From the IMG/VR virus record IMGVR_UViG_3300042350_002797, positions 124,001-188,000 of that record: 64,000 bases of DNA; one strand, 5' to 3'. A program made the translations under genes and the position numbers. How positions within the stretch are numbered: the first letter of the stretch is position 1; each line of letters starts with the position of its first letter. Shown here one piece after another: positions 3,343 through 20,404 of this stretch. A model generated the notes under the pieces. The model ran no database searches. It was not told where the DNA came from and worked only from the letters and a program-made list of their open reading frames with translations.

Positions 3343-3348
3343 TAAATA
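3342..3348 (+). promoter_or_regulatory. T4-late-like promoter motif ATAAATA
   Basis: ATAAATA about 20 nt upstream of AAGGAG-ATG(3369); the same motif precedes several other genes. The AT-rich background limits certainty. Confidence 0.5.
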
Positions 3349-3368
3349 TAAAGTAAGGAGTATAGTAA

Positions 3369-4859: not shown

Positions 4860-4871
4860 GGATAAAATATT

Positions 4872-5855: not shown

Positions 5856-5877
5856 TCAGAAATATCTTTAAAAAACT

Positions 5878-5912
5878 AACCTCTGCATAATTAATAAGTG
5901 CGGAGGTTTTTT
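5878..5912 (+). terminator. Hairpin + U-tract that also sequesters the SD of the next gene
   Basis: AACCTCTGCA-(TAATTAATAAG)-TGCGGAGGTT-TTTT, 10-bp stem with one G-U; GGAGG lies in the 3' arm, ATG at 5914. Confidence 0.65.
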
Positions 5913-5913
5913 A

Positions 5914-6261
5914 ATGACTAATAATTTTGAAGCTGCATTTGATTTGGCTAATCTTATGTCAGCAATATCGACTCAAAAAAAAATACTAAAAGAAGAATTT
6001 GAATTATCTACATTATATTTTTGTAATGGTGGAACTTTTAAAATTGATCAACAGCTAATCTCTTTTGTTACATCGTTAAAAATATTGCATCAAACAACCG
6101 CAGTAATTATTGATCAAAATAATTTACCAATTTTTATTGATAACGTTTCTATATTTTTAGAAAATATTTTACATCAATATACATTTGCTTCTAATAAATT
6201 TTTAACAGATTATAAACTGCTTCAAAATACTAGAAAAACAGAAAGTATTTTAGATTTATGA
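5914..6261 (+). CDS. Hypothetical protein (possible tail-fibre assembly chaperone)
   Basis: 115 aa with GGAGG SD, directly after the fibre genes; NGGTFKID and IIDQNNLPI segments. Confidence 0.45.
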   Translation: MTNNFEAAFDLANLMSAISTQKKILKEEFELSTLYFCNGGTFKIDQQLISFVTSLKILHQTTAVIIDQNNLPIFIDNVSIFLENILHQYTFASNKFLTDYKLLQNTRKTESILDL

Positions 6262-7085
6262 ACAGAGGGGTAATTCTATTTGCTTTTCAGTCAACAGTTG
6301 ATTATGTCTCGTTGGCAATTTTTTCTGCTGAACGTATAAAAAAACATTTAAAATTACCTGTTTCTTTAGTAACAGATTCTAAAAGTTATTTAGAAAATTT
6401 AGATAAAACTGAAATATTCGATGAAATTATAGAGATAGAAGATTCCACAATTCAAAAGAAAGTATTTAATAACGGCACTGCTGAATTTCAGAATATCATT
6501 TGGAAAAATTCCAATAGATCATTAGCGTATGATTTAACACCATATGAACATACTATTGTATTAGATGTAGATTACATAATTAATTCAGATTTTTTATTAA
6601 AATGCCTAGATATAAACAAAGATTTTCTAATTTTTAAAGATTCATGCGATTTATCATTTTGGAGAAATTCAAAAGAATTTACTTATGTATCAGAGTTTTC
6701 TATTCCTTTTTATTGGGCTACTGTTTTAATTTTTAAGAAATCTGAAAAAAATAAAACTTTTTTTCAACTAGTTAAAGAAATTAAAAATAATTGGAATTAT
6801 TATAGATCTTTATATCAAATTCCAGATTCAAAATTTAGAAATGACTTTGCATTTAGTATAGCTATACATATTACTTCTGGATTTGTTTCTAATAATTTTA
6901 ATAATATAATTCCTTCAAAAATTTATTATACTCTTGATAAAGATTATTTGTATAATATAACAGATAATTCTTGTTCGTTTTTAATTGAAAAACAAAATTC
7001 AGGAGGTCAGTATATACCTACTAAGGTCAATAATGTTGATGTTCATGTAATGAATAAATTCAGTCTTATTGAAAGTATTATATGA
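6258..7085 (+). CDS. GT-A fold nucleotide-diphospho-sugar transferase (GT8-like)
   Basis: YDLTPYEHTIVLDVDY (DxD motif), FYWATV, FRND.AF, HVMNK. Confidence 0.7.
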   Translation: MNRGVILFAFQSTVDYVSLAIFSAERIKKHLKLPVSLVTDSKSYLENLDKTEIFDEIIEIEDSTIQKKVFNNGTAEFQNIIWKNSNRSLAYDLTPYEHTIVLDVDYIINSDFLLKCLDINKDFLIFKDSCDLSFWRNSKEFTYVSEFSIPFYWATVLIFKKSEKNKTFFQLVKEIKNNWNYYRSLYQIPDSKFRNDFAFSIAIHITSGFVSNNFNNIIPSKIYYTLDKDYLYNITDNSCSFLIEKQNSGGQYIPTKVNNVDVHVMNKFSLIESII

Positions 7086-7903
7086 AAGGTCATTTAATTT
7101 TTGCACAAAATTCAGATGTTGATTATGTTAAACAAGCATATGCTCTTGCTTTGACTATTAAAAAAAATAATTCTATTAATAATGTAGCCATAGTAACAAA
7201 TAATTTGATACCAAAAAAATATAAACATGTATTTGATTACATTATAGAAATACCATGGGACGATGATGCTAAAGATTCTCATTGGAAAATTGAAAATCGT
7301 TGGAAACTAATACATACTTCTCCTTTTGATGAAACAATGGTTTATGATTCAGATATGTTGTTATTAACTTCTAATGATGACTGGTGGGATATTTTAGAAA
7401 AACACGATGTATTTTTAACTTCAGAAGTTTTAGATTATCGTAATAATATAATCAAAGATACTAAACTTCGAAAGGTGTTTACAGAAAATAGTTTACCAAA
7501 TGTTTATTTTGGATTTCATTATTTTAAAAAAACTAAGAGAGCATATGAATTTTACAAATGGTTAGAAGTAATTGTAAAAAATTATAAAGTTTTTTATAAA
7601 AAATTTACACCAATTTCTAATCAAAATTTTTGTAGCATGGATGTTAATGTTGCAATAGCTACTAAAATATTAGATGCAGTCGAAGAATTTACCTTGCCAA
7701 ATAGTCCTATAAAATTTGTACATATGAAAAAAGAACTACAAAACTGGCAAGAAATACCTGCTTCATGGTCTTCGTGTCTATTGATAAATTTTACTAAAAA
7801 TTTTAAATTTTATCTATCTAATAATTTACAAAATGGATTGTTTCATTACACAGAAGATGAATTTTTAACAGAAGAAATAATAGGAATAATTGAGAATGAA
7901 TAA
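7082..7903 (+). CDS. GT-A fold glycosyltransferase-like, paralog of the upstream gene
   Basis: SPFDETMVYDSDML (DxD motif), LPNVY.GFHYFKK, FVHMK. Confidence 0.7.
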   Translation: MKGHLIFAQNSDVDYVKQAYALALTIKKNNSINNVAIVTNNLIPKKYKHVFDYIIEIPWDDDAKDSHWKIENRWKLIHTSPFDETMVYDSDMLLLTSNDDWWDILEKHDVFLTSEVLDYRNNIIKDTKLRKVFTENSLPNVYFGFHYFKKTKRAYEFYKWLEVIVKNYKVFYKKFTPISNQNFCSMDVNVAIATKILDAVEEFTLPNSPIKFVHMKKELQNWQEIPASWSSCLLINFTKNFKFYLSNNLQNGLFHYTEDEFLTEEIIGIIENE

Positions 7904-8435
7904 TCTAGTTTATGTAATATACGATGATGAAATGAATCTTTTACAAATTACTTCTATATTACCAGAAACAAACAATTATTTTCAAATTGAACAATCGAAA
8001 GTAAAAGATTTTTATCTTGGATTTAAAAGTTATCCAGGGCATTATGTAAAAAATCATGGATTTAATAAATTTACAATAGAAGAAAAAGTTAACACCGCTG
8101 GCATATATAGATATAATGATTTAATTGATCTAACTGTACAAAAAGATAGTGCAGATTTAATGATAAAATACAATATTGAAACGTTTACTTGGAAGTTTAT
8201 GTTAGATACAGATGTGGCAAATTTAATAGAAACGAATCATTATGATAAGCTATTAGAATTTTATTTGGTAAAACGTGATCAACATAATTTTCTAGTTAGA
8301 ACTTTTGTAATTAAACTTGCAGATTTGATAAATGACACACTTGAATTCCGGTTCGAAACTGAATATGAACACTTTTTTGAAAATTTATTAATAAAAAGCA
8401 AACAACATTTTGATAAAATTGGAATATATGTATGA
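7896..8435 (+). CDS. Hypothetical protein
   Basis: ORF overlapping both neighbours; ATG at 7896 preferred over TTG 7890. Confidence 0.55.
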   Translation: MNNLVYVIYDDEMNLLQITSILPETNNYFQIEQSKVKDFYLGFKSYPGHYVKNHGFNKFTIEEKVNTAGIYRYNDLIDLTVQKDSADLMIKYNIETFTWKFMLDTDVANLIETNHYDKLLEFYLVKRDQHNFLVRTFVIKLADLINDTLEFRFETEYEHFFENLLIKSKQHFDKIGIYV

Positions 8436-9355
8436 CTAAACAATTTAAAATATTAGAGCACGACGTTGTTTTTTTAAGTTATGATGAACCTAATGCTGAA
8501 AAAAATTATGCGGATTTGTTAACTAAGTGTCCTTGGGCAAAAAGAGTTCATGGTGTCGAAGGGTCTGATTCTGCTCATAAAGCTTGTGCAGAATTAGCTC
8601 AAACAGAAAGAGTAATAATTATTGATGCTGATAATATTGTAGACTTAAAGTTTTTTGAACAAATAATAGAAGTCGAATCAGAAGAATTATACAACAAAAG
8701 TGTAATTTCTTGGTGTGGGTTAAATGTTATTAATGGTTTAAAATATGGTAACGGAGGTATTAAATGTTGGCCCAGAGAGTTCATATTGAATATGAAAACT
8801 CATGAAAATGCAGATAGTCCTCAAAGCCAAGTTGATTTTTGTTGGGATATAAATTACATAACATTAGACGAATGTATGAGTTTAGTATATAACAATGCTA
8901 CTCCGTGGCAAGCTTGGCGAGCAGGATTTCGAGAAGGTGTTAAAATGAGTTTATATGATGGTATAAAGCCTTCTTTTGATAAATTGTTTTCTAAGAGAAT
9001 ACATAAAAAGAATTATCATAGATTGTTAACATGGTTAAATGTAGGAGCAGATGTAGATAACGGTCGTTGGGCGATTCTAGGAGCGAGACAAGGTTGCTAC
9101 ATGACTAATTGTACAGATTGGGATTATGTCAATGTGAGAGATTTTAGCTGGTTAAATGAATTTTGGAGAACAGATGTAAGTTTAATTAATGAAACTATAC
9201 TCGATGAAGAGATAAGTAAATTTGGTGAAAAGTTGGCTCAAGATTTACATATACCTATTGATGAGCCATTAACTGCTATGCAATCTAAATTTTTTAAAGA
9301 AGTATTTACTAACCCTTCTAGGGTTCCTAACGGTGCAAGGATTATTAAAAAGTAA
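8432..9355 (+). CDS. GT2-like glycosyltransferase-fold protein
   Basis: DVVFLSYDEP, RVHGVEG, IIDADN (DxD), NGLKYGNGGIK, AWRAGFREGVK. Confidence 0.65.
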   Translation: MTKQFKILEHDVVFLSYDEPNAEKNYADLLTKCPWAKRVHGVEGSDSAHKACAELAQTERVIIIDADNIVDLKFFEQIIEVESEELYNKSVISWCGLNVINGLKYGNGGIKCWPREFILNMKTHENADSPQSQVDFCWDINYITLDECMSLVYNNATPWQAWRAGFREGVKMSLYDGIKPSFDKLFSKRIHKKNYHRLLTWLNVGADVDNGRWAILGARQGCYMTNCTDWDYVNVRDFSWLNEFWRTDVSLINETILDEEISKFGEKLAQDLHIPIDEPLTAMQSKFFKEVFTNPSRVPNGARIIKK

Positions 9356-10032
9356 TGTATGATATTGTTTTTATAAGCTATCAAGAACCTCATGCTGATA
9401 TAAATTATCAAAATTTATTGGAAAGATTTTCAACAGCAAAACGTGTTCACGGAGTCACCGGAATTCATCAAGCACATATTGAAGCTGCTAAACTTGCGTT
9501 AACAAAGATGTTCTGGGTAGTAGATGGTGATTCACAAGTGTTAGATGATTTTTGTTTTGATTATAAAGTAGAAGAAAAATTTTTAGAACATGTGCATGTG
9601 TGGAGAAGCATTAATCCAATAAACGGTCTTACATACGGATATGGCGGAATTAAATTATTACCTCGTAATTTAACATTATATATGGATATATCTAAACCAG
9701 ATATGACTACTAGCATAAGTAGACATTTCATACCTGTTCAGAAAGTTAGTAATATTACTGCATTTAATACAGATCCTTTTAATACATGGAAAAGTGCGTT
9801 TAGAGAATGTGTTAAATTAAGTAGTAAAGTGATTGATAGGCAGAAATCTAATGAAACAGAAGAAAGATTGCACACTTGGTGCACAGTGGGTAAAGATAAA
9901 TTGTTCGGAAAATATGCAATTCAAGGAGCACATGAAGGTGTAGAATATGGAATAATGAATAAAGGCAATATTGATGCGTTAAAAAAGATAAACGATTTCG
10001 AATGGTTAAAGGAACGATTTAATGGAAATTAA
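9355..10032 (+). CDS. GT2-like glycosyltransferase-fold protein, paralog of the upstream gene
   Basis: DIVFISYQEP, RVHGVTG, WVVDGD, NGLTYGYGGIK, TWKSAFRECVK. Confidence 0.65.
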   Translation: MYDIVFISYQEPHADINYQNLLERFSTAKRVHGVTGIHQAHIEAAKLALTKMFWVVDGDSQVLDDFCFDYKVEEKFLEHVHVWRSINPINGLTYGYGGIKLLPRNLTLYMDISKPDMTTSISRHFIPVQKVSNITAFNTDPFNTWKSAFRECVKLSSKVIDRQKSNETEERLHTWCTVGKDKLFGKYAIQGAHEGVEYGIMNKGNIDALKKINDFEWLKERFNGN

Positions 10033-11125
10033 GGATTTGTTAGACAGGTTTGAATTATTATTTCCCGACAACACAAAAATATCGAACTTACGCAGGTCTT
10101 ACACTGATAAAGATTTCTCCAGCATTTTTAGATTAGTCGAGAACGAAGATTTAAGAAAAGCTGTTATTGAAAAAAATCTACACAGTATTTTTAGATTAAT
10201 TGGAGATAATGAAACAGTTGATGAATTAAGAAAAGCTGTTATCGAAAAAAATTTGCATAGTATTTTTAGATCGATGAATAATTTTAATGATATCGAAGAT
10301 TTAAGAAAAGCAGTCACTGAAGAAAATTTAAATAGCATTTTTAGACTGATCGAGAACGAAGATTTAAGAAAGTCAGTTGTTGAGGAAAATCTACACAGTA
10401 TTTTTAGATTAGTGAATAATGAAGATTTAAGAAAACTATTATTAGAGAATAATTACTGGAGTCTTTGGAAATTGTTATCGAAAGAATTAGATACGCAATT
10501 CGTTGCTGCTTTTAAGTATTTTTATTCAGAGAACATTGATTATGATACTGACTGTTTTTCTCAAGGGCAGTTATTAAGTAAAAGATGGTTGATTTCTGAG
10601 TTAAAAAAACTTGATTTAGATTTAGGAACTGTATTTTTATGTGCTGGCTGGTACGCTACTTTAGCTGTTATGATATTTGAAAATAATTTAAAAGTTAATA
10701 AAATTAGAAGTTTTGACATTGATCCTAGCTGTGTTAATATAGCAGAAAGATTTAATAAACCATGGGAAATAGATCAATGGAAATTTAAAGCTGCTACTGC
10801 TGATATTTTAAATTTAAACTATAATAAAACAACATACGAAGTTAACAAACTCGATGGGTCAGAGTTAACATTAACTGATGTTCCTGACACAATAATTAAT
10901 ACTAGTTGTGAACATATAGAAAATTTTAATCAATGGTATGACAGTATACCAAACGGAAAATTACTTGTGCTTCAAACTAATGATTATTTTGGCATTGAAG
11001 ATCACGTAAATTGTGTTAACTCTTTAGACGAATTTTCTGATATGACACCGATGAAAGAATGTTTGTATCGAGGAGAATTAGAATTACCCAAGTATAGGAG
11101 ATTTTTGAGAATTGGATATAAATGA
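10022..11125 (+). CDS. Class I SAM-dependent methyltransferase-like protein with N-terminal tandem helical repeats
   Basis: VFLCAGWY (motif I-like), RSFDIDP, TADI, IINTSCEH; N-terminal repeats DLRKAV.E.NLHSIFRL. Confidence 0.65.
   Translation: MEIKDLLDRFELLFPDNTKISNLRRSYTDKDFSSIFRLVENEDLRKAVIEKNLHSIFRLIGDNETVDELRKAVIEKNLHSIFRSMNNFNDIEDLRKAVTEENLNSIFRLIENEDLRKSVVEENLHSIFRLVNNEDLRKLLLENNYWSLWKLLSKELDTQFVAAFKYFYSENIDYDTDCFSQGQLLSKRWLISELKKLDLDLGTVFLCAGWYATLAVMIFENNLKVNKIRSFDIDPSCVNIAERFNKPWEIDQWKFKAATADILNLNYNKTTYEVNKLDGSELTLTDVPDTIINTSCEHIENFNQWYDSIPNGKLLVLQTNDYFGIEDHVNCVNSLDEFSDMTPMKECLYRGELELPKYRRFLRIGYK
10120..10445 (+). repeat. Imperfect in-frame tandem repeat, about 5 units of 60-75 bp
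   Basis: Recurrent (c/t)agyatttttaga...gaagatttaagaaaa, encoding SIFRL..NEDLRKAV.E.NL. Confidence 0.9.
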
Positions 11126-11336
11126 TTTCGATTTAAGAACTCTTCAGAAAGAATCTGCAAGGGCGTTATCTGCCATGGAGGCTACAAATAACAACATCTT
11201 TAAATTTAATCAACAAGCTCATCACGACAGTCAGAACTGGTACAAAGCAGTTATTAAATGGTATATTGATGAGTACGGAGGATTACCCAGTCAAGTAGGT
11301 CCAGGTAAAAATGTAAATTTGGTGTATGATAATTGA
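11112..11336 (+). CDS. Small hypothetical protein (74 aa)
   Basis: Overlaps both neighbours in the operon; TTG start. Confidence 0.55.
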   Translation: MDINDFDLRTLQKESARALSAMEATNNNIFKFNQQAHHDSQNWYKAVIKWYIDEYGGLPSQVGPGKNVNLVYDN

Positions 11337-11704
11337 TGTTAGAATTTGTTAAACCTTTAAAGATTTATTTGTTTAAAGAAACTAATGAAGTTAGTTTCAG
11401 TATACTTGTGAGCCCTAATAGCGTCAATACGTATATTTTAAAAGTAACAGAATTTGAAAAAATTTTAGAATTATGGGATAAAAAAGGCGGAGCAGAAATA
11501 CGCACAGATACTGCATCATGGCATATACAATATAAAACAAGAGGCCCAAGACCTGAATCTAAAATTGTATCTTATGTTAGAATAGCTATATATTATAAAG
11601 ATCAATCATTTCATTATAGAGTTGATTATAATGAAATGATTGAAATATCTAAAGATTATTTTTATCAAAAAAATAATAAAATGTATTGGGATAAAGATCA
11701 ATGA
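11336..11704 (+). CDS. Hypothetical protein
   Basis: TGATG coupling with the upstream ORF and ATGA coupling with the downstream radical SAM gene. Confidence 0.6.
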   Translation: MLEFVKPLKIYLFKETNEVSFSILVSPNSVNTYILKVTEFEKILELWDKKGGAEIRTDTASWHIQYKTRGPRPESKIVSYVRIAIYYKDQSFHYRVDYNEMIEISKDYFYQKNNKMYWDKDQ

Positions 11705-12963
11705 CAGACCGAGACGAATTTATAGAAAGATTTTCTCCTGCTAAACACCCGACAATGTGTCTTTTGCCCTTTATGCATTTTAGTACAGAAACTAGTGGTG
11801 AAATTAAACTGTGTTGTGAAGCAAGACCTAATATAGATATTAATTTAGTAGATGGAAGATCTAAAAAAATAATAGAAATTTTTAACAACGAATACTATAA
11901 CACTGCTAGAAAAAAGTTAATTAACGGAGAAAAAATACCAGAATGTAATTCTTGTTGGTTCAAAGAAAAACAAGGATTTAAATCTAAAAGATTAGAGGAG
12001 TGGGAAGTATTTTACAAACATAACAAAAGTACTTTACCTACAGATTTTTTTCAGTGGGAAAAACGTGGAACTGATTTAATACCAACTTATTATAATTTAC
12101 AAGTTGCAAGAACTTGTAATTATGCTTGTATTATGTGTTCTACTGATTGGAGCTCTCTTATAACTTCTATAGGACAAAAAATGGGAGTAGAAAAAAGAAC
12201 CATGTTGATGAATCAACGTTGGTGGACACTTACTCCAGCGCAATCTCAGTTAGATAAGAGCGAAATATTTTGGCAAGGATTAAAAGAAATAGTTAGTAAA
12301 CTTGAATATCTTTATGTAACAGGAGGGGAACCATTTATAATAAAACCTTTGTGGGAATTTATAAATTATCTCGTAGAAAAAGATTATGCGAAAAATATAG
12401 TATTTTGGTGTAACACTAATACTTCTCAGTTTACTGAACATCAACTTTTTCTATTAAAACAGTTTAAACGTGTAGAATTAAATCTAAGTATAGATGCATA
12501 CGGAGAACTTAATGAATATCTTCGAACAAGTTCAAATTGGAATGACATTGAGAACAATATCAATTTAGCTATTAAAAATGTTAGCAGTAATTTTTATTTA
12601 ACATTGGTGCCAGTAGTAAGCGGATTAAATATAAGATATTTGCATGAACTAATTTATTGGTGGAGAAACAAAGTAGGACAAAATAATCGTTGCGCGATAA
12701 ACCCTATTCTATTAGTAGCCCCAAGATCAATGTCAACAAATGTACTACCGAAGAAGTACATTGATGAAATAAAAAAATCTTTAACAACCGCGATTCAGGA
12801 TTGTAAATTAGATTCTGAATCAAATTTTGAAAATGTCTTCAATTTATTAGATAATCATGAATTTAGTTATAGAGCTAGCACCAAGTTAAAAGAAGAATTT
12901 GAATATTTTAAAGAAGCTGTAAATAAAGATTATTTTACAAAGTTTAATTATTTGTTTGAATGA
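11701..12963 (+). CDS. Radical SAM protein with N-terminal Twitch/SPASM-like Cys cluster
   Basis: CNYACIMC (CxxxCxxC), TGGEP, NTN, SIDA; N-terminal CLLPF...CC...CNSC. Confidence 0.9.
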   Translation: MTDRDEFIERFSPAKHPTMCLLPFMHFSTETSGEIKLCCEARPNIDINLVDGRSKKIIEIFNNEYYNTARKKLINGEKIPECNSCWFKEKQGFKSKRLEEWEVFYKHNKSTLPTDFFQWEKRGTDLIPTYYNLQVARTCNYACIMCSTDWSSLITSIGQKMGVEKRTMLMNQRWWTLTPAQSQLDKSEIFWQGLKEIVSKLEYLYVTGGEPFIIKPLWEFINYLVEKDYAKNIVFWCNTNTSQFTEHQLFLLKQFKRVELNLSIDAYGELNEYLRTSSNWNDIENNINLAIKNVSSNFYLTLVPVVSGLNIRYLHELIYWWRNKVGQNNRCAINPILLVAPRSMSTNVLPKKYIDEIKKSLTTAIQDCKLDSESNFENVFNLLDNHEFSYRASTKLKEEFEYFKEAVNKDYFTKFNYLFE

Positions 12964-12964
12964 A

Positions 12965-14137: not shown

Positions 14138-14153
14138 CGTTAAATAATCTACC

Positions 14154-15557
14154 ATGAAAAAATATCCATCAGACACATTCTGTATTCTACCTTGGATACA
14201 TTTAAGTACAAGACCCGACGGTAGTATGCGAGTTTGCTGCACTGCTAATGCTAGTGGTGTTGGCTCAACTAATGACGAAACCGGTGGCCATGTCGGAATT
14301 TTAAAAACTGAAGAAGGAAAGCCTGCTAATTTAAATGTAAGCGATTTACAATCAGGTTGGAATAGCACTTACATGAAAAATGTAAGAAAAATTATGTTGG
14401 CAAATGGCAAACCTGAAAGTTGTTCAAAGTGTTATAAAGAAGAAGATTCCGGACATTTAAGTAAGCGTCAATGGGAAACTAATTATTGGGCACAGCGAGT
14501 GAATATTGATCAGTTAGTTGCACAAACTACAGACGACGGACAGGTTCCTCCAAACTTGAAATATATTGATTTAAGATTTGGATCTAAATGTCAATTAGCT
14601 TGTGTCATGTGCTCTCCTCATGATAGTAGTGGTTGGATTCCTGAATGGAATAAAATTTATCCTATAGTACAAAATAAAGAATTAAGTAAAACAATGGCTT
14701 GGGAAAATAAAGGCAGTGTTAATGGATCTAGTTTTAACTGGCATAAAAACAATCCTGTATTTTGGCAGCAGTTTAATGAACAAATACCTAACATGCAGCA
14801 ATTATACTTTGCCGGAGGTGAGCCATTAATTATTGACGAACATTACGACATTTTAGAAGAATGTATAAGACAAGGCCATGCTAAAAATTTAGAAGTAAGA
14901 TATAATAGTAACGGAATAGAGTGGAGAGAAGATTTATTCGATTTATGGAAAGAATTTAAGCTTGTAAGATTTCATTATAGTGTAGATGCCATAGGTAAGA
15001 AAAATGATTACATAAGATATCCCAGTGACTGGAAAAGAACAGAAGAAGTGTTTAGAATTCTGGATAATGAAACATCAAATAATGTAGAAGTGACTGTTGC
15101 TTGTGCAGTACAAGCGTTAAACATTTATTATATTCCTGAATTTATAAAATGGAAACTAGAACAAAATTATAAAAAAATTAATATGTGGCCTTTTGGAGCA
15201 GGAGGAATAAACCATCATTTTGTATATTGGCCTGCACATTTAAATGTAAAAATATTGCCTCGGTGGTTCAAAGATAAGTGCGAACAACATTACGAAGAAT
15301 TTATTCCTTGGTGGACAGAAAATTGGGAATTAGGAATTCCTTCGTGGTACAAAGGAAAAATTACTAAAGAACAGTGGATTAATGCAGAATACGGAATTAA
15401 AAGATTACGTGGTATGATTAAATTTATGAAGTCAGAAGATTGGAGTAATAGACTTCCTGAAACTGCTGAATACTTAAAACTACTAGATCAACAAAGAAAT
15501 TTAAAATTTGAAGATATTTTTACAGAAATGAAAGGAGTATTCGATGGAATACATTAA
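14154..15557 (+). CDS. Radical SAM protein with N-terminal Twitch/SPASM-like Cys cluster
   Basis: CQLACVMC, FAGGEP, YNSNG, SVDA; N-terminal CILPW...CC...CSKC; paralog of 11701..12963. TAAATA occurs twice just upstream (14131, 14141). Confidence 0.9.
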   Translation: MKKYPSDTFCILPWIHLSTRPDGSMRVCCTANASGVGSTNDETGGHVGILKTEEGKPANLNVSDLQSGWNSTYMKNVRKIMLANGKPESCSKCYKEEDSGHLSKRQWETNYWAQRVNIDQLVAQTTDDGQVPPNLKYIDLRFGSKCQLACVMCSPHDSSGWIPEWNKIYPIVQNKELSKTMAWENKGSVNGSSFNWHKNNPVFWQQFNEQIPNMQQLYFAGGEPLIIDEHYDILEECIRQGHAKNLEVRYNSNGIEWREDLFDLWKEFKLVRFHYSVDAIGKKNDYIRYPSDWKRTEEVFRILDNETSNNVEVTVACAVQALNIYYIPEFIKWKLEQNYKKINMWPFGAGGINHHFVYWPAHLNVKILPRWFKDKCEQHYEEFIPWWTENWELGIPSWYKGKITKEQWINAEYGIKRLRGMIKFMKSEDWSNRLPETAEYLKLLDQQRNLKFEDIFTEMKGVFDGIH

Positions 15558-16446
15558 TGATTTTAGAAGAGAGCATTATATGCTGCCCATGGATCATCCT
15601 ATTGCTATTGAAAACATGCGTAGGCATATTAGTCGTGCAGATAAATCCAGTGATCCTATGTTTTCTAAAGAGGAACTAGATTGGATTTGGAAATTTGCCT
15701 TTGCCGGCGGCAAAGAAGTAAGAATGAATAAAAATGGAACAGTATTAGTTGCCGGACAACTGCACGAAGTGTATTTAAAATTTAAAGACAGGATTGATAG
15801 TTGTTTAGGCATCGACGCAGGAAAGAGTCCTCAAGTAGGCGGAAATTATTTTATTACTCCTCAGCAATACGGATTGCATAATGATAGTATACGTCCAGAA
15901 GATTTTACTACTACATTTAATAAAATACCTTTAAATCACGAACAAAGAAAATACACTTGTTGGAAAAATTGGCTTCTTCCTTTATGGATAGGCACACATT
16001 TAGAAGAAGAAGATGGCGGGCAAATCGTGTTTTTTGATCAAAGACATATCGATTGGGCGCATGTATATAATGGTGGCGGGCTTGTACCTAATATTGCCAG
16101 TGTTTACAAAATCACAACTGATTATACAGAATTACAATTTCATGATGGTCAAGGAAATGTAATTTCTAAAGAGAACAATGCAGTTCCTTTTGACAAAGCA
16201 GTTTTTAATCAAGTAATGAATACACCTTATGAACGCCTGCGAGGATTAAGTGCAGAAACTATTTTAGATTGGGAACCAGGAAAACCAATGTGGTTCGATG
16301 CTGTGCAATTACATAATACCAATGAAGGCACTAAAACTAAAGGAAAAAAGTTATGGAATGCTAAAATGGGATTACTATTAACTTTTTTAATCGAGTTAGA
16401 CGACGATTTGCTTTTAGAATGGCGCAGAGAACAATCCAAAATGTAA
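15544..16446 (+). CDS. Putative 2OG-Fe(II) dioxygenase
   Basis: HxD (LHNDS) and distal H (FDAVQLHNT) in a double-stranded beta-helix-like arrangement. Confidence 0.55.
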   Translation: MEYINDFRREHYMLPMDHPIAIENMRRHISRADKSSDPMFSKEELDWIWKFAFAGGKEVRMNKNGTVLVAGQLHEVYLKFKDRIDSCLGIDAGKSPQVGGNYFITPQQYGLHNDSIRPEDFTTTFNKIPLNHEQRKYTCWKNWLLPLWIGTHLEEEDGGQIVFFDQRHIDWAHVYNGGGLVPNIASVYKITTDYTELQFHDGQGNVISKENNAVPFDKAVFNQVMNTPYERLRGLSAETILDWEPGKPMWFDAVQLHNTNEGTKTKGKKLWNAKMGLLLTFLIELDDDLLLEWRREQSKM

Positions 16447-17166
16447 TTACAAGTAGGGGAGAATTTTAGGAACGATTAAATTCTCCGCTACTACTCTGTT
16501 ACCTTCATTGTCAAAATGATGTCCGTTGTCGTAAATAAACTTATTAAAATTTTCTTTTAATTCTGTTTGAACATCAAAATCTACAATAGAATTTATAAAT
16601 TCATTAAACAAAACATGGTGAACTTCCCAATGAGGAGTGCAGTGAGTGTATATTAAATGCGGTATAGAGCACTGTTCTAATATTTTTTTAATCGCACACA
16701 TATATGAAAAATAAATACTTTGATCATCACAGTCATACAAATAACTGTTTTTGGCTATTTCTTTATATCTTGATGCACGTTGCGGCCAAAAAGCATTAAT
16801 GATTTGTTCATAGTTTGGATTCCAAAATACAAAATTATCTCTTACCGACATATCACATTTGTAAATATTTTGATATGTTTCGCTAAAGGTCCACTTTAAT
16901 TGTTTAGAATTTATTCTAATATGTTTTCTTCTATCGTTGGTAATTTGAAATATGATAAAATCGTAATTATTTTTTATTTCAGATTTAAGTATTTCAAATT
17001 GAGTACCAATATCGCACCCTCCGTGCGCTGCACTGTAGTATCTAACATTAATCGAATTTTCTTTTAAGACGTCCACTACATTTTCAGGAATACCATGTTT
17101 TCCTTCGTGATTGTATTGACTAAAACTACAACCTAGATGTAATATTTTCTTTATATGTTTTTTCAT
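16447..17166 (-). CDS. SGNH/GDSL-like hydrolase or acyltransferase
   Basis: LGCSFS (block I-like) and C-terminal DNGHHFDNEGN (DxxH). Confidence 0.6.
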   Translation of the reverse strand: MKKHIKKILHLGCSFSQYNHEGKHGIPENVVDVLKENSINVRYYSAAHGGCDIGTQFEILKSEIKNNYDFIIFQITNDRRKHIRINSKQLKWTFSETYQNIYKCDMSVRDNFVFWNPNYEQIINAFWPQRASRYKEIAKNSYLYDCDDQSIYFSYMCAIKKILEQCSIPHLIYTHCTPHWEVHHVLFNEFINSIVDFDVQTELKENFNKFIYDNGHHFDNEGNRVVAENLIVPKILPYL

Positions 17167-17866
17167 AGCTTTCTATAATTAAATTTCTGTAGTTTCTATA
17201 TTGTTGAATAGGCCACCCATGAATAATCATGTGTATTCTAGGAGTGAAACTATTATTCCAAACTGCATGAACTGTACTAATATCAATTAACCTAACATCT
17301 CCAGGACTCCATGGAATAAGACCATAATTTTCCATTCCAAAATTACAGTCTTCTGGATTATTTAACGCAATATTAATTGCTTGTAATTTTCTTTTATCAT
17401 TATCTTTATGAGGCATAATATAACCTCCAGGTTCCAATAACATAAAACGAACTCTGAGAAATTTATCTAAAAATGAGTTTTGTTTTAGCCAAGAAGTTGT
17501 AATCGGACATTTATCTGCAATTTCAGTCCAATGATAATCAGGAAGATCTTTTAAATTTTCGTATTGATCGTCGCCTTGTGTTATATGTTTTCCTCGACCA
17601 TGAATTACCAGACTTTTCCAACCTTTATGAGACTCGCCTTCTTCCCTGTGGGAATAAAATTCTTCTAATAATTTAAGAGATTCTTGATACATCTCTTGAT
17701 ACGGTATAGATATGTTTAATTTTAGACTTCGTAGGTTAGACTCTTCGATTATCCATTTATACTGATCGTCGGCACTAAAATTTAGAGGTATCGATTCTAG
17801 GTTGTAATAATGTTTCTCTAACTTCCTTTTTTCGAAGAACTTTGAGATATTCTGTATAGTACTCAT
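17126..17866 (-). CDS. Aspartyl/asparaginyl beta-hydroxylase-family 2OG oxygenase
   Basis: RVRFMLLEPGGYIMPHKD...HAVWNNS.TPRIHMI; likely start ATG 17866 (track gives 17929). Confidence 0.8.
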   Translation of the reverse strand: MSTIQNISKFFEKRKLEKHYYNLESIPLNFSADDQYKWIIEESNLRSLKLNISIPYQEMYQESLKLLEEFYSHREEGESHKGWKSLVIHGRGKHITQGDDQYENLKDLPDYHWTEIADKCPITTSWLKQNSFLDKFLRVRFMLLEPGGYIMPHKDNDKRKLQAINIALNNPEDCNFGMENYGLIPWSPGDVRLIDISTVHAVWNNSFTPRIHMIIHGWPIQQYRNYRNLIIESYEKTYKENITSRL

Positions 17867-19154
17867 ATAATTGTTGTCTCCAAGGAAAATTAAATTCTTC
17901 ATCGGGATATAAGTTGATGTCTTTAACACTTAATAATCCATACCCTCTCATATTACCTTCACTAGTAGGTAAAATTCCTAAAAAATAGCTATCATTTTTA
18001 TTAATTCTTTCGGCACTAGCCAATGTTTTTATCATTAAATTAAAATGTATTTGACTATACAAATAGGCAGTTTTTCTATATGATAAGATATTACTAAATG
18101 CGTAGAGAGTATTATCTTTTATTCTATGAATGGTATCTTCTATTTCGAAAAAACTTTCCTTATAAAAATTTAATTTAACATCTGAAAGACGAAACTGCAT
18201 TTCAGAGAAAGGTTCAATTAGTCCTCCAAGAAAATCTTTTTCTGATTTTTTTATTTCATCTATATCTGAAACCTGTAAGTTGTATCCGCTAGCAAAACAC
18301 AATTGATCATAATCTTTTCCATTATAATCGTAGATTACTTTTTTAGTAAAATCAATAGCAGGCTGACTAATATCTCTAAAATCTACAGCATGAGCATTAG
18401 GACATTTGTCTAAAATTTGTAGAGCTTGTAATCCATTAGCAGGTGTTACTAGTCGTTTTATACTAGGCAATTCAAATCTAATAATTGGCTCGTTAGTGCA
18501 ATTAAAGATAGTATCATCAAATGTACATTCGATACGTAGATATGATCCATATTTTAATACTAAATCGTTGTAAAGATAGAATTTATGTTTTCTCTCTTCG
18601 TCGGTCCAGGGTCTTATTTTAAAACCATGTTCTAACAATTTACTAATTATTAGTCCTCCAGGTTTAATTTTTTTAAAGGTCTGCGACTCTTGACCTTTTT
18701 CTATAAACATTGGTGTGTAATCGTCGTGAAAATTATCAGTACTTCTATGTATGTTTACACAGACTTGATTAGTTAGAGCATCGTAAGCAGGAGACCCACA
18801 TCTTTTCCAATCTTCTACATTTAGGATAAAACATTGATTATGTAATTCGTAATATTCAGATTTTCTGTCTAAGATATGTCCTATTAAAGAATAATCGGAA
18901 TCTTTAGACACAAGTTGAGTTAGCCATAAAGGGTCAAATGTATTTCCGGGTCTTGTGAATATAACTTTAGGTGCTTGTTCAGATTTTAAGCTTTCGAAAG
19001 CATCTTGATACGATAAAAAGTACTTATACATTATATCGTGTCTTACAGATGCTTCTAAAAGATTGTAACCAATTTCGCGACCTAGTGTATCTTTATATGA
19101 TTCGTTATCGTCTACAATATAAATTATATAAGTTTTTCTGATTAATTTTCTCAT
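17775..19154 (-). CDS. Hypothetical protein (possible GT-A-like N-terminal half)
   Basis: 459-aa ORF; GHILDR...YELHNQCFILN..W segment; no certain family. Confidence 0.55.
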   Translation of the reverse strand: MRKLIRKTYIIYIVDDNESYKDTLGREIGYNLLEASVRHDIMYKYFLSYQDAFESLKSEQAPKVIFTRPGNTFDPLWLTQLVSKDSDYSLIGHILDRKSEYYELHNQCFILNVEDWKRCGSPAYDALTNQVCVNIHRSTDNFHDDYTPMFIEKGQESQTFKKIKPGGLIISKLLEHGFKIRPWTDEERKHKFYLYNDLVLKYGSYLRIECTFDDTIFNCTNEPIIRFELPSIKRLVTPANGLQALQILDKCPNAHAVDFRDISQPAIDFTKKVIYDYNGKDYDQLCFASGYNLQVSDIDEIKKSEKDFLGGLIEPFSEMQFRLSDVKLNFYKESFFEIEDTIHRIKDNTLYAFSNILSYRKTAYLYSQIHFNLMIKTLASAERINKNDSYFLGILPTSEGNMRGYGLLSVKDINLYPDEEFNFPWRQQLYEYYTEYLKVLRKKEVRETLLQPRIDTSKF

Positions 19155-19179
19155 TTTATTTTGACACTTTGATTGTTTA

Positions 19180-19191
19180 ATAAATATTTAT
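19180..19191. promoter_or_regulatory. Palindromic, bidirectional late-promoter-like motif ATAAATATTTAT
   Basis: Perfect 12-bp palindrome giving ATAAATA on both strands, between divergent genes 19154(-) and 19217(+). Confidence 0.5.
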
Positions 19192-19216
19192 GTGATACTA
19201 TTATAGTACAAAAAAA

Positions 19217-20404
19217 ATGGAAAAATCCGAATACGATTTTAAAAAGATACCGTTCGACGACATTGTTCGAGTTGGGCAACGAAACATGTTATACAGAGAC
19301 CTGTTTACAGTTAGTTGGCTACTAGGAAGATATTGTAATTACAGATGTAGTTATTGTTGGCCTTATGCTAGAAGCGACAAGAAAGATCATAGACCAACCG
19401 AACTATGTATTAAAACTATTGACGAAATAAAACGTCAAGCACGTGAACGAGGATTCAATAGTTTTCATTTTAGTCTCAGCGGCGGCGAGCCTACGTTTCA
19501 TCCAGGATATATTGATATTCTAAATCATTTGAATGATGATGCATCGAATACCAATTATACCAGTGTTCATATGACCACTAACATGAGTCGAACATTAAAA
19601 TGGTTTGAGCAAGAATACTGTTCCGCTGTAAGTAAATTTCATAGAGCCAGTATTACTGCTAGTCTACATACTGAACATGTAAACACTCCGGAAAAAATGA
19701 AAGAGTTTGGAGATAAATTGGAACTATGTCAGGAATATGATGTTCAAGTAACTATAAACATGGTAATGGTTCCTGAATGGTTTGATCGTGATTATGAAAA
19801 TGCATTGTATTTTCACAATAGAGGTATCAATGTTACATTAAAACCTCAAAGCGATCCTACTGCCAGCAGAGTAGTAGATGGTTATACATCGGAGATGTTA
19901 GAAAAACTACACAATGGAATGCCTCAACGAGCTTTTACAGAACACAAGGCCACTAAAGCTAAGTTAGTATCAAGGCCTGCTCCGACTTTTGTAAAAATGC
20001 CAGATCCATTATATAAGAATGAAAACAAAGACATACCTCAACACTTTCAAGTAGAGTTTATAGATAAGAATAAAAAAGTTTGGTATATGGATCAAGCAGA
20101 ACGATTCAACGCATTTAACTTTAACAAATTCCAAGGATGGGAGTGCTCTAGTGGTTTTAGAGGCGTTATTATTAGAGAACCAGACGGAAGTATAAAAAGA
20201 AGTTACAGTTGCTATGATAAACCTCTAGGAAATATAGAAACAGGATTTAAACTATTTGACACACCGGAGATGTGTATTACACCAAGTTGTGTAAGCAGTG
20301 CTGATAGTAAAATTCCCAAAAGAGCTCCAGGAACACAGTTGCCATTGTATCCTGGAGATACAAGTTATTCTGAAATAAAATCAGATGTCATAGGAAATAC
20401 TTGA
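19217..20404 (+). CDS. Radical SAM protein with C-terminal Twitch/SPASM domain
   Basis: CNYRCSYC, LSGGEP, TTN, ASLH; C-terminal C..G...C...LGNI...C...C. Confidence 0.9.
   Translation: MEKSEYDFKKIPFDDIVRVGQRNMLYRDLFTVSWLLGRYCNYRCSYCWPYARSDKKDHRPTELCIKTIDEIKRQARERGFNSFHFSLSGGEPTFHPGYIDILNHLNDDASNTNYTSVHMTTNMSRTLKWFEQEYCSAVSKFHRASITASLHTEHVNTPEKMKEFGDKLELCQEYDVQVTINMVMVPEWFDRDYENALYFHNRGINVTLKPQSDPTASRVVDGYTSEMLEKLHNGMPQRAFTEHKATKAKLVSRPAPTFVKMPDPLYKNENKDIPQHFQVEFIDKNKKVWYMDQAERFNAFNFNKFQGWECSSGFRGVIIREPDGSIKRSYSCYDKPLGNIETGFKLFDTPEMCITPSCVSSADSKIPKRAPGTQLPLYPGDTSYSEIKSDVIGNT

What the first reader, a model, noticed from the sequence alone, without database searches (positions are those of the whole stretch)
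5914..20404. 14.5-kb tailoring island beside the tail fibres: four GT-like genes, four radical SAM, two 2OG oxygenases, SGNH, methyltransferase
Seen: immediately after the fibre genes come two GT8-like and two GT2-like paralogs, a methyltransferase, four CxxxCxxC enzymes with auxiliary Cys clusters, a 2OG oxygenase, an Asp/Asn beta-hydroxylase-like enzyme and an SGNH protein, with late-promoter-like motifs at 5887, 14131/14141 and 19180. Established: Twitch-domain radical SAM enzymes such as BtrN oxidise sugars, SPASM enzymes modify peptides, and hydroxylases create glycosylation acceptors. Inference: a biosynthetic-cluster-like system that builds and chemically elaborates a glycan on virion proteins (S/T-rich fibres) or on the host surface; product unknown.
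Basis: partly seen in the sequence, partly recalled or inferred. Interest (0 to 1): 0.72.

Follow-up and report, generated by a model that had tools for sequence, protein, structure and literature searches.

The report
Phage glycan-tailoring island with radical SAM array
Next to the tail-fibre genes of an uncultivated 365-kb T4-like phage lies a real block of four sugar-transferase-like genes, a methyltransferase, four radical SAM enzymes and two oxygenases; relatives expand it to as many as 13 radical SAM genes, and its core also occurs in the chromosomes of predatory bacteria, but its product is still unknown.

Summary
Four radical SAM genes pass Pfam, and two of them are N-terminal-twitch (NF033640) members. 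Two pairs of GT-A-fold paralogs carry an invariant DxD. There is also a class I methyltransferase fold, an AspH-family oxygenase and a probable second 2OG oxygenase. The SGNH call rests on motifs only.

The block has the lowest GC of any stretch of its length in the genome. It consists of two separable modules:
- **GT module:** o115 to GT2b. It stays next to, or 10-25 kb from, fibD and the fibre genes in every phage checked, including cultured Ralstonia phage RsoM2USA.
- **Radical SAM module:** a conserved frame GT2b-MT-o74-rSAM2...rSAM3...rSAM4. It was seen in 63-73 of 80 related viral loci, with 4 to 13 radical SAM genes. This window has the minimal form.

The core genes (rSAM2/3/4, GT2a/b, MT) also sit in Bdellovibrionota chromosomes among bona fide GT2 and GT-C genes.

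All island proteins look soluble. ATAAATA late-type motifs precede rSAM4 and the o459 operon. The "promoter" at 5887 lies inside a terminator-like hairpin.

Best reading: a cytoplasmic system, at least partly late-expressed, that builds a glycan and edits it by radical chemistry. The acceptor is unproven; fibre proteins are plausible. No description was found in the papers searched.

The parts
294..1475 (+). fibA, tail collar/fibre-like protein (context)
   Evidence: 15 PHROG tail/tail-fibre families, best 4.5e-17
1486..3342 (+). fibB, fibre/virion structural protein; shares its N-terminal domain with fibC
   Evidence: PHROG 6002, 15511 and 14394. The same N-terminal PHROGs hit RsoM2USA ORF355.
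3342..3348 (+). ATAAATA late-type promoter core, 27 nt before fibC
3369..4859 (+). fibC, fibre protein
   Evidence: PHROG 22593, 6427 and 19602 (tail fiber)
4872..5855 (+). fibD, S/T-rich (22%) protein of unknown fold, always just upstream of o115 and the GT module; candidate acceptor
   Evidence: No PHROG or Pfam hit. Composition. Synteny.
5878..5913 (+). Terminator-like hairpin (11-bp stem, then a U6 run) between fibD and o115.
   Evidence: dG -15.4 kcal/mol, z -5.0. RNA-library contigs cover the fibre genes only (weak).
5914..6261 (+). o115, small conserved protein that opens the GT module
   Evidence: Found in 20 related loci, always followed by GT8a
6258..7085 (+). GT8a, GT-A / GT8-like transferase
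   Evidence: Paralog of GT8b; invariant D103xD105
7082..7903 (+). GT8b, GT-A / GT8-like transferase
   Evidence: Atlas clusters are named nucleotide-diphospho-sugar transferase, and structural neighbours carry PF01501/PF03407. phrog_1903.
7890..8435 (+). o181, unknown protein; the slot is conserved (185 aa in RsoM2USA)
8432..9355 (+). GT2a, GT-A-fold transferase
   Evidence: 34% identical to GT2b; invariant DxD; Atlas cluster named GT2-like
9355..10032 (+). GT2b, GT-A-fold transferase; junction of the two modules
   Evidence: AF2 model pLDDT 90.5. Residues 1-137 match B4GALNT1, WrtF, SunS/ThuS and PBCV-1 A64R with Z 9-11.6. Present in 72 of 80 loci.
10022..11125 (+). MT367: N-terminal helical repeats of variable number, plus a C-terminal class I SAM methyltransferase fold
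   Evidence: AF2 model pLDDT 87. More than 500 Foldseek PDB hits to methyltransferases. Repeats seen. Fused to GT2a/b in some loci.
11112..11336 (+). o74, 74-aa Cys-free protein with a TTG start, evenly conserved (mean 77% column identity)
   Evidence: Lies between MT and rSAM2 in 63-70 loci. Not found in the bacterial cassettes.
11333..11704 (+). o123, unknown accessory protein
   Evidence: 13 loci
11701..12963 (+). rSAM1, N-terminal-twitch radical SAM; accessory paralog
   Evidence: NF033640 270 bits; PF04055; CNYACIMC motif. Orthologs occur only in close relatives.
12956..14137 (+). rSAM2, radical SAM with a C-terminal auxiliary Cys cluster; core gene
   Evidence: PF04055. Invariant C289, C308, C309, C376 and C380. 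78 of 80 loci. 41-48% identical to Bdellovibrionota copies.
14154..15557 (+). rSAM3, N-terminal-twitch radical SAM; the most conserved core gene
   Evidence: NF033640 427 bits. 262 viral relatives were confirmed; the 80 loci kept are at least 70% identical. 56-59% identical to Bdellovibrionota copies.
15544..16446 (+). ox300, probable Fe(II)/2OG oxygenase
   Evidence: Invariant H112, D114 and H257. Atlas neighbours are DUF6445, 2OG-FeII_Oxy_3, PhyH and WelO5.
16447..17166 (-). Possible SGNH/GDSL-like esterase (motif level only)
   Evidence: Invariant G12, S14, N100, D213, G215 and H217. No family or PDB hit.
17126..17929 (-). Asp/Asn beta-hydroxylase-family Fe(II)/2OG oxygenase
   Evidence: PF05118 at 6.6e-17, 62 bits. 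Weak PDB hits to AspH and proline cis-4-hydroxylase.
17775..19154 (-). o459, unknown protein; travels with the AspH-like gene
   Evidence: 14 loci. An o459-like segment is fused to radical SAM domains in the 1413-aa protein P0158.
19180..19191 (.). Divergent pair of ATAAATA late-type promoter cores: plus strand toward rSAM4, minus strand toward the o459 operon
19217..20404 (+). rSAM4, radical SAM with a C-terminal Cys-rich region; core gene that closes the array
   Evidence: PF04055 at 7.3e-15. 64 of 80 loci at about 73% identity. 58-62% identical to Bdellovibrionota copies.
20365..21033 (-). thyX, right-hand boundary of the island (not part of it)
   Evidence: PF02511 at 6.9e-46. In L087 and L091 thyX directly follows GT2b.

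Best explanation
The island is a soluble, cytoplasmic glycoconjugate-building and radical-editing cassette carried in the hypervariable region downstream of the phage's fibre genes.

**Shown**
- There are two modules. The GT module has four GT-A/DxD transferases plus o115 and o181. The radical SAM module has MT367, o74, three conserved radical SAM enzymes (rSAM2, rSAM3, rSAM4), and accessory rSAM1, two Fe/2OG oxygenases, an esterase-like protein and o459.
- The core is conserved across more than 60 viral loci, one cultured phage and Bdellovibrionota chromosomes.

**Inferred mechanism**
- The GT-A enzymes use nucleotide sugars to assemble a short glycan on an acceptor.
- MT367 methylates it.
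- The radical SAM/twitch enzymes abstract hydrogen from unactivated sugar carbons. This could give epimerisation, oxidation/dehydration, C-methylation or C-C/C-O links.
- The 2OG oxygenases hydroxylate the glycan or prepare acceptor residues.
- Relatives vary the chemistry by swapping in up to 13 radical SAM paralogs.

**Most likely acceptor (not shown):** a late-made phage protein from the adjacent fibre set, such as the S/T-rich fibD or fibB/fibC. The product would then be a chemically unusual coat on the receptor-binding apparatus.
For: - **Gene identities:**
- **Functional coupling:** GT2a+GT2b+MT367 are fused into single ORFs in several loci. The frame GT2b-MT-o74-rSAM2...rSAM3...rSAM4 occurs in 63-78 of 80 loci.
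- **Cellular context:** in a 2.9-Mb Bacteriovoracaceae chromosome, GT2b-GT2a-MT are flanked by four Pfam GT2 genes, a PMT_2 (GT-C) gene and an amine oxidase. They adjoin an array holding the rSAM3 (58%), rSAM4 (58%) and rSAM2 (48%) orthologs.
- **Linkage to fibres:**
  - The same order is found in RsoM2USA, downstream of tail sheath and structural genes.
  - It is also found in L087 and L092.
  - In five large relatives, fibD and GT8a/b lie 10-25 kb upstream on the same strand.
- **Cytoplasmic action:** no island protein has a hydrophobic segment typical of a membrane helix.
- **Late expression of part of the island:** ATAAATA cores lie 37 nt upstream of rSAM4 and of o459. The same motif precedes the large structural genes.
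- **Precedent (established knowledge, not tested here):** the radical SAM enzymes BtrN, AviX12 and HygY edit sugars, and 2OG oxygenases tailor orthosomycin oligosaccharides.
Against: - No acceptor or product has been observed.
- The GT-like proteins fail every sequence-family test, and the GT-A fold is shared with nucleotidyltransferases such as IspD and MobA.
- The radical SAM enzymes resemble solved enzymes only in the core. The matches are SkfB, viperin, a cytosylglucuronate decarboxylase, GDGT-MAS, MoaA and NifB, so their substrate class is open.
- A terminator-like hairpin separates fibD from the island. No ATAAATA motif precedes the long plus-strand block from 5914 to 16446.
- The one RNA library holding this phage shows contigs only over the fibre genes (weak).
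- Relatives add an AMP-binding enzyme, a fatty-acid desaturase and a nitroreductase. These fit lipid or small-molecule chemistry as well as glycan chemistry.
Confidence: 0.45

Rival explanations
1. Protein- or peptide-directed (RiPP-like) maturation. The radical SAM/SPASM-twitch enzymes, the AspH-like hydroxylase and the methyltransferase would act directly on a ribosomal product. That product could be o74 or the fibre proteins. The chemistry could be crosslinks, epimerisation or beta-hydroxylation, with the GT-A enzymes adding sugars to the peptide as SunS/ThuS do.
For: - o74 is a conserved 74-aa ORF directly upstream of rSAM2 in 63-70 loci.
- rSAM2 has a C-terminal auxiliary Cys cluster.
- Weak NCBIfam similarities point to peptide maturases.
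- The best PDB match of the N_Twi profile is SkfB.
- The GT2b fold matches SunS/ThuS S-glycosyltransferases.
- The AspH family hydroxylates protein Asp/Asn.
Against: - o74 is evenly conserved along its whole length, has no Cys and shows no leader/core pattern.
- o74 is absent from the bacterial cassettes and from RsoM2USA.
- No RRE, protease or exporter was found.
- The complex prediction for rSAM2+o74 gave no answer, which is not evidence either way.
- The cellular cassette lies in a glycosyltransferase cluster.
Confidence: 0.2
2. Remodelling of host envelope lipid or lipid-linked glycan precursors at the cytoplasmic face. Targets could be Und-P-linked sugars, lipid A or glycolipids. The effect would be to alter receptors, block superinfection or keep progeny from sticking to debris.
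For: - The cellular homolog cluster contains PMT_2/ArnT-like GT-C and processive-type GT2 genes.
- PF05118 also contains the lipid A hydroxylase LpxO (from knowledge, not tested here).
- Relatives carry a fatty-acid desaturase and an AMP-binding enzyme.
- Weak hits point to the tetraether-lipid radical SAM enzymes Tes and GDGT-MAS.
Against: - No island protein in this window has a membrane segment.
- The phage cassette has no flippase or GT-C.
- Late-type motifs at rSAM4 and o459 suit virion maturation better than early host takeover.
- The GT module stays tied to the fibre genes in phages.
Confidence: 0.15
3. Synthesis of a free small molecule, such as an oligosaccharide or aminoglycoside-like compound, or a cofactor-like compound in the manner of glycosylated and methylated mycofactocin. 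The phage-infected cell would use or release it.
For: - The gene mix (GT, MT, radical SAM, 2OG oxygenase, and in relatives B12-rSAM, AMP-binding enzyme and nitroreductase) resembles a natural-product cluster.
- A GT2b homolog lies in Streptomyces accessory operons.
- A Bdellovibrionales MAG cassette sits next to KAS III, KR and AMP-binding genes.
Against: - No scaffold-forming enzyme, exporter or resistance gene is present in the window.
- The GT module keeps a strong positional tie to structural genes.
Confidence: 0.12
4. Hypermodification of phage DNA or nucleotides, by glycosylation, methylation or radical chemistry, next to thyX.
For: - The island abuts thyX.
- Phage GT genes often glucosylate DNA.
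- rSAM4 weakly matches a QueE-like PHROG.
Against: - The genome has no ThyA-family hydroxymethylase (PF00303), although the search rang in 10 of the 14 control genomes.
- No DNA-binding, kinase or transglycosylase partner was seen.
- The cellular homologs lie in envelope-glycan-type clusters.
- thyX adjacency is only a boundary: in L087 and L091 thyX follows GT2b with no radical SAM genes between them.
Confidence: 0.05

Closest known systems
Radical-SAM and 2OG-oxygenase tailoring of oligosaccharide and aminoglycoside natural products (BtrN, AviX12, HygY; orthosomycin EvdO/AviO oxygenases). This comparison comes from established knowledge, not from a test here.
   Same: It combines several glycosyltransferases, a SAM methyltransferase, twitch-type radical SAM enzymes and Fe/2OG oxygenases in one co-oriented cluster. 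The proteins are soluble.
   Different: - No detectable sequence relationship beyond the radical SAM core.
- The twitch domain here is N-terminal (NF033640).
- The cluster is carried by a lytic-type jumbo phage next to its fibre genes.
- There is no aglycone or scaffold pathway.
Virion protein glycosylation by virus-encoded GT-A enzymes: PBCV-1 A64R and mycobacteriophage capsid/tail-tube glycosylation (Freeman et al. 2023, as cited in PMC12619734)
   Same: The GT-A fold of GT2b matches PBCV-1 A64R structures 2p72/2p73 with Z 9.3-9.4. The enzymes are soluble and virus-encoded, and at least part of the island has late-type promoter motifs.
   Different: - Those systems have no radical SAM, oxygenase or methyltransferase array.
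- Glycosylated virion proteins have not been shown here.
Mycofactocin pathway (MftC radical SAM-SPASM, MftF GT2, MftM methyltransferase acting on the peptide MftA); comparison from knowledge
   Same: A small ORF sits next to a radical SAM enzyme with an auxiliary cluster, together with a GT2-like enzyme and a methyltransferase.
   Different: - The NCBIfam mycofactocin model scores only 18-21 bits against a cut-off of 265.
- o74 is 74 aa with no conserved C-terminal Val-Tyr.
- No MftB, MftD or MftE equivalents are present.
Glycocin S-glycosyltransferases SunS/ThuS
   Same: GT2b shares their GT-A fold, Z 9.4-10.2.
   Different: About 10-13% identity, no glycocin precursor, and the C-terminal helical part differs.
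T4-type DNA glucosylation
   Same: A T4-like phage (Gp23 capsid) carrying several GT genes.
   Different: There is no hydroxymethylase in the genome, and the GT families are unrelated by sequence.

Membership tests
Radical SAM superfamily (PF04055) | CxxxCxxC cluster motif and a Pfam score above the gathering cut-off | tested here: met
   All four proteins score 37.6-56 bits against a cut-off of 29.5. Their motifs are CNYACIMC, CNAACPMC, CQLACVMC and CNYRCSYC.
N_Twi_rSAM (NCBIfam NF033640) | Full-length score above 170 bits; twitch-type Cys motif N-terminal to the radical SAM core | tested here: met
   rSAM1 scores 269.7 bits and rSAM3 426.7 bits. Invariant C10, C28, C90 and C93 lie before the CxxxCxxC motif. 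rSAM2 (44 bits) and rSAM4 (43 bits) are NOT members.
SPASM/twitch auxiliary-cluster domain (PF13186) | Pfam score above the cut-off; conserved Cys ligands | tested here: inconclusive
   rSAM1 scores 20.0 bits and rSAM3 21.1 bits, just under the 21.5 cut-off. rSAM2 has five invariant C-terminal Cys but no Pfam hit.
GT-A glycosyltransferases, GT2-like (GT2a, GT2b) | Rossmann-like GT-A fold with a DxD metal/nucleotide-sugar motif | tested here: met
   In the GT2b model, residues 1-137 match GT-A structures with Z 10-11.6. D57 and D59 are invariant.
Pfam Glycos_transf_2 (PF00535) / CAZy GT2 by sequence | Sequence-profile match | tested here: not met
   No Pfam, NCBIfam or PDB-profile hit even at E 10. 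File these proteins as GT-A-fold, not as GT2 members.
GT8 (PF01501) for GT8a/GT8b | Sequence-profile match; GT-A fold with DxD | tested here: inconclusive
   No Pfam hit. D103xD105 is invariant. The Atlas structural neighbours of a near relative carry PF01501/PF03407 at TM 0.63-0.67. No model of the protein itself was made.
Class I SAM-dependent methyltransferase (MT367 C-terminal domain) | Seven-strand Rossmann-like fold; glycine-rich SAM motif I; acidic residue after strand 2 | tested here: met
   More than 500 Foldseek PDB hits at E <= 1e-3, all methyltransferase or SAM-utilising folds. FDIDP after strand 2 is near-invariant. Motif I is non-canonical (LCAGWY). SAM binding itself was not tested.
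Fe(II)/2OG oxygenase, Asp/Asn beta-hydroxylase family (PF05118) | Pfam score above the cut-off | tested here: met
   AspH267 scores 62.2 bits against a cut-off of 22.6. The substrate (protein, lipid or free amino acid) was not tested.
Fe(II)/2OG oxygenase (ox300) | HxD...H facial triad on a double-stranded beta-helix | tested here: inconclusive
   The triad H112/D114/H257 is invariant in 12 homologs. Atlas neighbours are 2OG families at TM 0.43-0.51 by the near relative's model. No Pfam or PDB hit.
SGNH/GDSL hydrolase | Blocks I (GDS), II (G), III (GxND) and V (DxxH) | tested here: inconclusive
   GxS is invariant at residues 12-14 and N100 is invariant. The C-terminal motif is D213-x-G-x-H217, not DxxH. 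No Pfam or PDB hit.
RiPP biosynthetic cluster | Precursor peptide with leader and core; RRE or equivalent; protease and/or exporter | tested here: not met
   o74 shows no leader/core pattern and has no Cys. No RRE, protease or transporter family was found in the island.
T4-type DNA glycosylation system | Hydroxymethyl-pyrimidine synthase (ThyA family) plus DNA glucosyltransferases | tested here: not met
   PF00303 is absent from the 364.5-kb genome, while the same search rang in 10 of 14 control genomes.
Virion-glycosylation system | Glycan demonstrated on virion proteins and dependent on the phage GT genes | not testable with these tools
   Needs glycoproteomics. The RsoM2USA proteome paper identified only ten abundant bands and did not look for modifications.

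The most novel reading that the evidence does not exclude
A lineage of aquatic jumbo T4-like phages uses large, rapidly reshuffled arrays of radical SAM enzymes (4 to 13 per genome) together with GT-A transferases. With these it would install a chemically exotic, lineage-specific modification on its receptor-binding fibres. That would be a combinatorial 'chemical diversification' of the adsorption apparatus, with enzymes exchanged with predatory Bdellovibrionota. Such a mode of virion maturation would be previously unrecognised. It would also be the largest known reservoir of uncharacterised N-terminal-twitch radical SAM chemistry.
Probability: 0.2. Interest if true: 0.9.

Novelty: new variant of a known kind. 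Interest (0 to 1): 0.74.

Why it matters
**Scale.** In the roughly 20-kb loci around the conserved rSAM3 gene, 715 of 1,589 ORFs (45%) fall into radical SAM families. The N-terminal-twitch family has 8,592 50%-identity clusters at E <= 0.001 in public data. No solved relative matches beyond the radical SAM core, and no functional study turned up in the papers searched.

**Handles for experiment.** The window holds a compact four-enzyme version. Cultured Ralstonia phage RsoM2USA has a one-enzyme version. Both are tractable entry points into this chemistry.

**If the acceptor is a fibre protein,** this would extend virion glycosylation to radical editing of the receptor-binding apparatus. That bears on host range, immune or defence evasion and phage engineering.

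**If the acceptor is not a fibre protein,** the island is a phage-borne biosynthetic cluster shared with predatory bacteria. Either outcome is new biology.

Tried and rejected
- **Nucleotide search of the island against 50,697 phage records:** no match. tblastn of rSAM4 also found nothing.
- **Profile searches against PDB sequences:** nothing useful for GT2a/b, ox300, MT367, the SGNH-like protein or o459.
- **Pfam at E 10 for the ten unassigned proteins:** only noise.
- **Canonical T4 late promoter TATAAATA:** 1 site in the window against 12.9 expected, so it was dropped in favour of ATAAATA.
- **Sigma-70 and terminator scan:** no more sites than in shuffles. It missed the fibD hairpin because the loop exceeds 8 nt.
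- **Complex prediction for rSAM2 + o74:** no answer; not used as evidence.
- **'Relatives' genome search:** not available for virus records.
- **Moraphage paper (PMC12619734) and cyanophage S-SCSM2R paper (PMC12801897):** unrelated lineages or genes.
- **Six literature searches:** no description of phage radical SAM arrays or of N-terminal-twitch enzymes in Bdellovibrionota.
- **DNA-modification idea:** rejected as the lead hypothesis after finding no ThyA-family gene.
- **fibD and o115 as part of a cellular cassette:** considered because they occur in a contig binned as Bdellovibrionales (L092). Rejected because that contig's neighbours have full-length PHROG matches, so it is phage-like.

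Full report
**Setting.** The window is bases 124,001-188,000 of a 364,554-bp IMG/VR virus record. The record has a T4-type major capsid gene (Gp23, E 8e-100). That capsid is 70-78% identical to those of the jumbo Phosso, Vibrio 2.275.O, PA5oct and GAP32 group. No cultured phage matches the island at the DNA level. The genome has seven radical SAM genes, four of them in the island.

**Checking the observation.**
- Pfam confirms four radical SAM proteins and an Asp/Asn beta-hydroxylase-family protein.
- NCBIfam places rSAM1 and rSAM3 firmly in N_Twi_rSAM (NF033640), in which the twitch-type Cys domain precedes the radical SAM core. rSAM2 and rSAM4 are not members.
- The three claimed paralog pairs are real.
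- The four "GT-like" proteins match no sequence family. However, an AlphaFold model of GT2b (pLDDT 90.5) has a GT-A fold over residues 1-137. It matches B4GALNT1, WrtF, SunS/ThuS, PBCV-1 A64R and also nucleotidyltransferases, with Z 9-11.6.
- The DxD motif is invariant in both GT families. Atlas neighbours of GT8b carry GT8 and Nucleotid_trans domains.
- MT367 is an N-terminal array of about 19-aa helical repeats, of variable number, plus a class I methyltransferase fold.
- ox300 has an invariant HxD...H triad and 2OG-family Atlas neighbours.
- The SGNH call rests on motifs only, and the C-terminal motif is DxGxH rather than DxxH.
- The island has the lowest GC of any 14.5-kb stretch of the genome, 0.303 against 0.363.

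**Promoter claims.**
- The canonical TATAAATA is depleted: 1 site against 12.9 expected.
- ATAAATA is 17-fold enriched upstream of genes. Of 69 genomic sites, 51 lie within 70 nt upstream of a start in the right orientation, many before large structural genes.
- In the region there are three such sites. One is at 3342, before fibC. The other two form a divergent pair at 19180 (+) and 19191 (-), in front of rSAM4 and the o459/AspH/SGNH-like operon.
- The 5887 "motif" lies in the loop of an 11-bp hairpin followed by U6 (dG -15.4 kcal/mol, z -5). This is a terminator-like element between fibD and o115.
- 14131 and 14141 are only TAAATAA variants.
- One metatranscriptomic library holds near-identical contigs over fibB, fibC and fibD (3095-5565) and none over 5814-9000. 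This fits attenuation at the hairpin, but it is weak: only four contigs, and contigs do not show absence.

**Relatives change the picture.**
- rSAM3 has 262 confirmed relatives in IMG/VR; the 80 loci kept are all at least 70% identical.
- Those 80 loci share a frame: GT2b (72 loci), MT367 (73), o74 (70), rSAM2 (78), rSAM3 (80) and rSAM4 (64).
- Between and around these genes lie variable runs of further radical SAM paralogs. 614 of 1,589 ORFs carry CxxxCxxC, and 715 fall into radical SAM clusters.
- Where both ends are visible, there are 4-13 radical SAM genes from GT2b to rSAM4, with a median of 10. The window has 4, the minimum.
- Relatives also add B12-binding radical SAM, nitroreductase, AMP-binding, fatty-acid-desaturase and DUF6071 genes.
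- GT2a, GT2b and MT367 are fused into single ORFs in several loci. This argues that they act together.

**Two modules.**
- In L087 the order is fibA-D, o115, GT8a, GT8b, o181, GT2a, GT2b and then directly thyX. The GT module therefore exists without the radical SAM module.
- Cultured Ralstonia phage RsoM2USA has a fibre-N-terminal-domain protein (ORF355), a 123-aa ORF, GT8a, GT8b, a 185-aa ORF, GT2a, one N_Twi radical SAM, GT2b and the MT domain. These lie downstream of the tail sheath (ORF359) and structural genes.
- In many viral loci the 10-kb flank shows other genes (family f481) rather than fibres. In five large contigs, however, fibD and GT8a/b lie 10-25 kb upstream of the array on the same strand.
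- Linkage to the fibre region therefore holds. In those relatives the island is simply much larger, more than 30 kb.

**Cellular counterparts.**
- A search of one genome per species with the GT2a/b profile found the family in three settings. Some hits are phage-like contigs binned into MAGs. Others are in Streptomyces and Kitasatospora, where GT2b stands alone beside a GT4-like gene. The rest are repeated hits in Bdellovibrionota.
- In a 2.9-Mb Bacteriovoracaceae chromosome, GT2b-GT2a-MT lie between cbb3 oxidase genes and four Pfam GT2 genes, a PMT_2 (GT-C) gene and an amine oxidase. Next to them is an array with orthologs of rSAM3 (58%), rSAM4 (58%) and rSAM2 (48%), about eight more radical SAM genes, and families f184 and f281, which are also seen in phage arrays.
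- Five such genomes have no Gp23 gene and 11-27 N_Twi hits each.
- 31 of 151 sampled Bdellovibrionota genomes have N_Twi genes above the cut-off, against 0 of 14 model genomes.
- In a quick tree the Bdellovibrionota rSAM3 orthologs form one clade (SH-aLRT 99). The root and the direction of transfer are unresolved.
- One Bdellovibrionales-binned contig (L092) is phage-like by PHROG matches.

**Mechanism.**
- All island proteins lack membrane-helix-like segments, so the chemistry is cytoplasmic.
- The genome has no ThyA-family hydroxymethylase, which removes the T4-style route to DNA glycosylation.
- The gene mix, the fusions and the cellular context favour a glycoconjugate pathway. GT-A enzymes would build a glycan. 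MT367 would methylate it. Radical SAM/twitch enzymes and Fe/2OG oxygenases would edit it. The conserved trio would make an invariant feature and the variable paralogs would add lineage-specific decoration.
- The acceptor is inferred, not shown. The persistent position downstream of the fibre genes, the late-type motifs and the S/T-rich fibD (22% S+T) and fibres (16-21%) make a virion protein the leading candidate.
- The radical SAM enzymes resemble solved enzymes only in the core: SkfB, viperin, cytosylglucuronate decarboxylase, GDGT-MAS, MoaA and NifB. Peptide, lipid and small-molecule substrates therefore remain open, and these are the rival explanations.
- o74 is evenly conserved, Cys-free and phage-specific. 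It does not look like a RiPP precursor. A complex prediction with rSAM2 gave no answer.

**Novelty.** The N_Twi family is very large: 8,592 50%-identity clusters at E <= 0.001. Six full-text searches found no description of phage radical SAM arrays, of this cassette, or of N_Twi expansions in Bdellovibrionota. I file it as a new variant of known kinds, namely virus-encoded glycosylation and radical-SAM glycan tailoring. A categorically new role in virion maturation is not excluded.

Noticed in passing
G000:C1 ~261969-264403 (outside the window) and ~27857-28360: Three further radical SAM genes lie elsewhere in the genome. The pair at 262-264 kb carries B12-binding domains (one over the Pfam cut-off, one weak). 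In 13 related loci a B12-radical SAM gene sits inside or beside the array.
   Followed up: partly
G001 (Bacteriovoracaceae chromosome) 1,394,000-1,428,000; loci L097, L166, L168: Bdellovibrionota carry clustered expansions of N-terminal-twitch radical SAM genes: 11-27 hits per genome in five genomes, and 31 of 151 sampled genomes over the cut-off. These include orthologs of the phage rSAM2/3/4 trio at 48-58% identity. The direction of transfer is unresolved.
   Followed up: partly
L092 (140-kb contig binned in a Bdellovibrionales MAG): This contig carries fibD, o115, GT8a/b and GT2a/b homologs plus rSAM3/rSAM4 orthologs. Its neighbours have full-length PHROG matches, so it is phage-like. That could be misbinning or a hint that phages of this kind infect Bdellovibrionota.
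   Followed up: partly
whole genome; window sites 3342, 19180, 19191, 25635, 50118, 51045, 56950, 61943: The genome's late-type promoter core appears to be ATAAATA with a variable first base. 51 of 69 sites lie within 70 nt upstream of a start. The canonical TATAAATA is strongly depleted in the window. GTTGACA is also enriched upstream of genes and may mark early promoters.
   Followed up: partly
window 10022-10540 (MT367 N-terminal half): A tandem helical repeat of about 19 aa (EDLRKAV.E.NLHSIFRL) varies in copy number between relatives. Its role (scaffold or substrate-binding arm) is unknown.
   Followed up: no
L083:4391-8632 (protein P0158, 1413 aa): A single ORF joins an o459-like segment to two radical SAM domains. 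This links the unknown o459 family functionally to the N_Twi enzymes.
   Followed up: no
window 17775-17929: The AspH-like ORF, as listed from its GTG start, overlaps the 3' end of o459 by up to 155 nt. A similar overlap of about 65 nt is seen in a relative (L008), so the true start is probably later.
   Followed up: no
L165 (Streptomyces sp. CA-146814 chromosome 1,699,772-1,720,476): A lone GT2b homolog (33-35% identity) is conserved in many Streptomyces and Kitasatospora genomes. It sits in an operon with a GT4-like gene, two unknown genes and a zeta-toxin/AAA-like kinase, beside HD-CE/HSP90-like and DUF6119 genes. This may be a mobile or defence-associated region.
   Followed up: no
window 3000-9000, RNA library X1: An aquatic metatranscriptome holds contigs at least 99% identical to this phage over fibB, fibC and fibD only. 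The phage, or a near-identical one, was present and probably active in that sample.
   Followed up: partly
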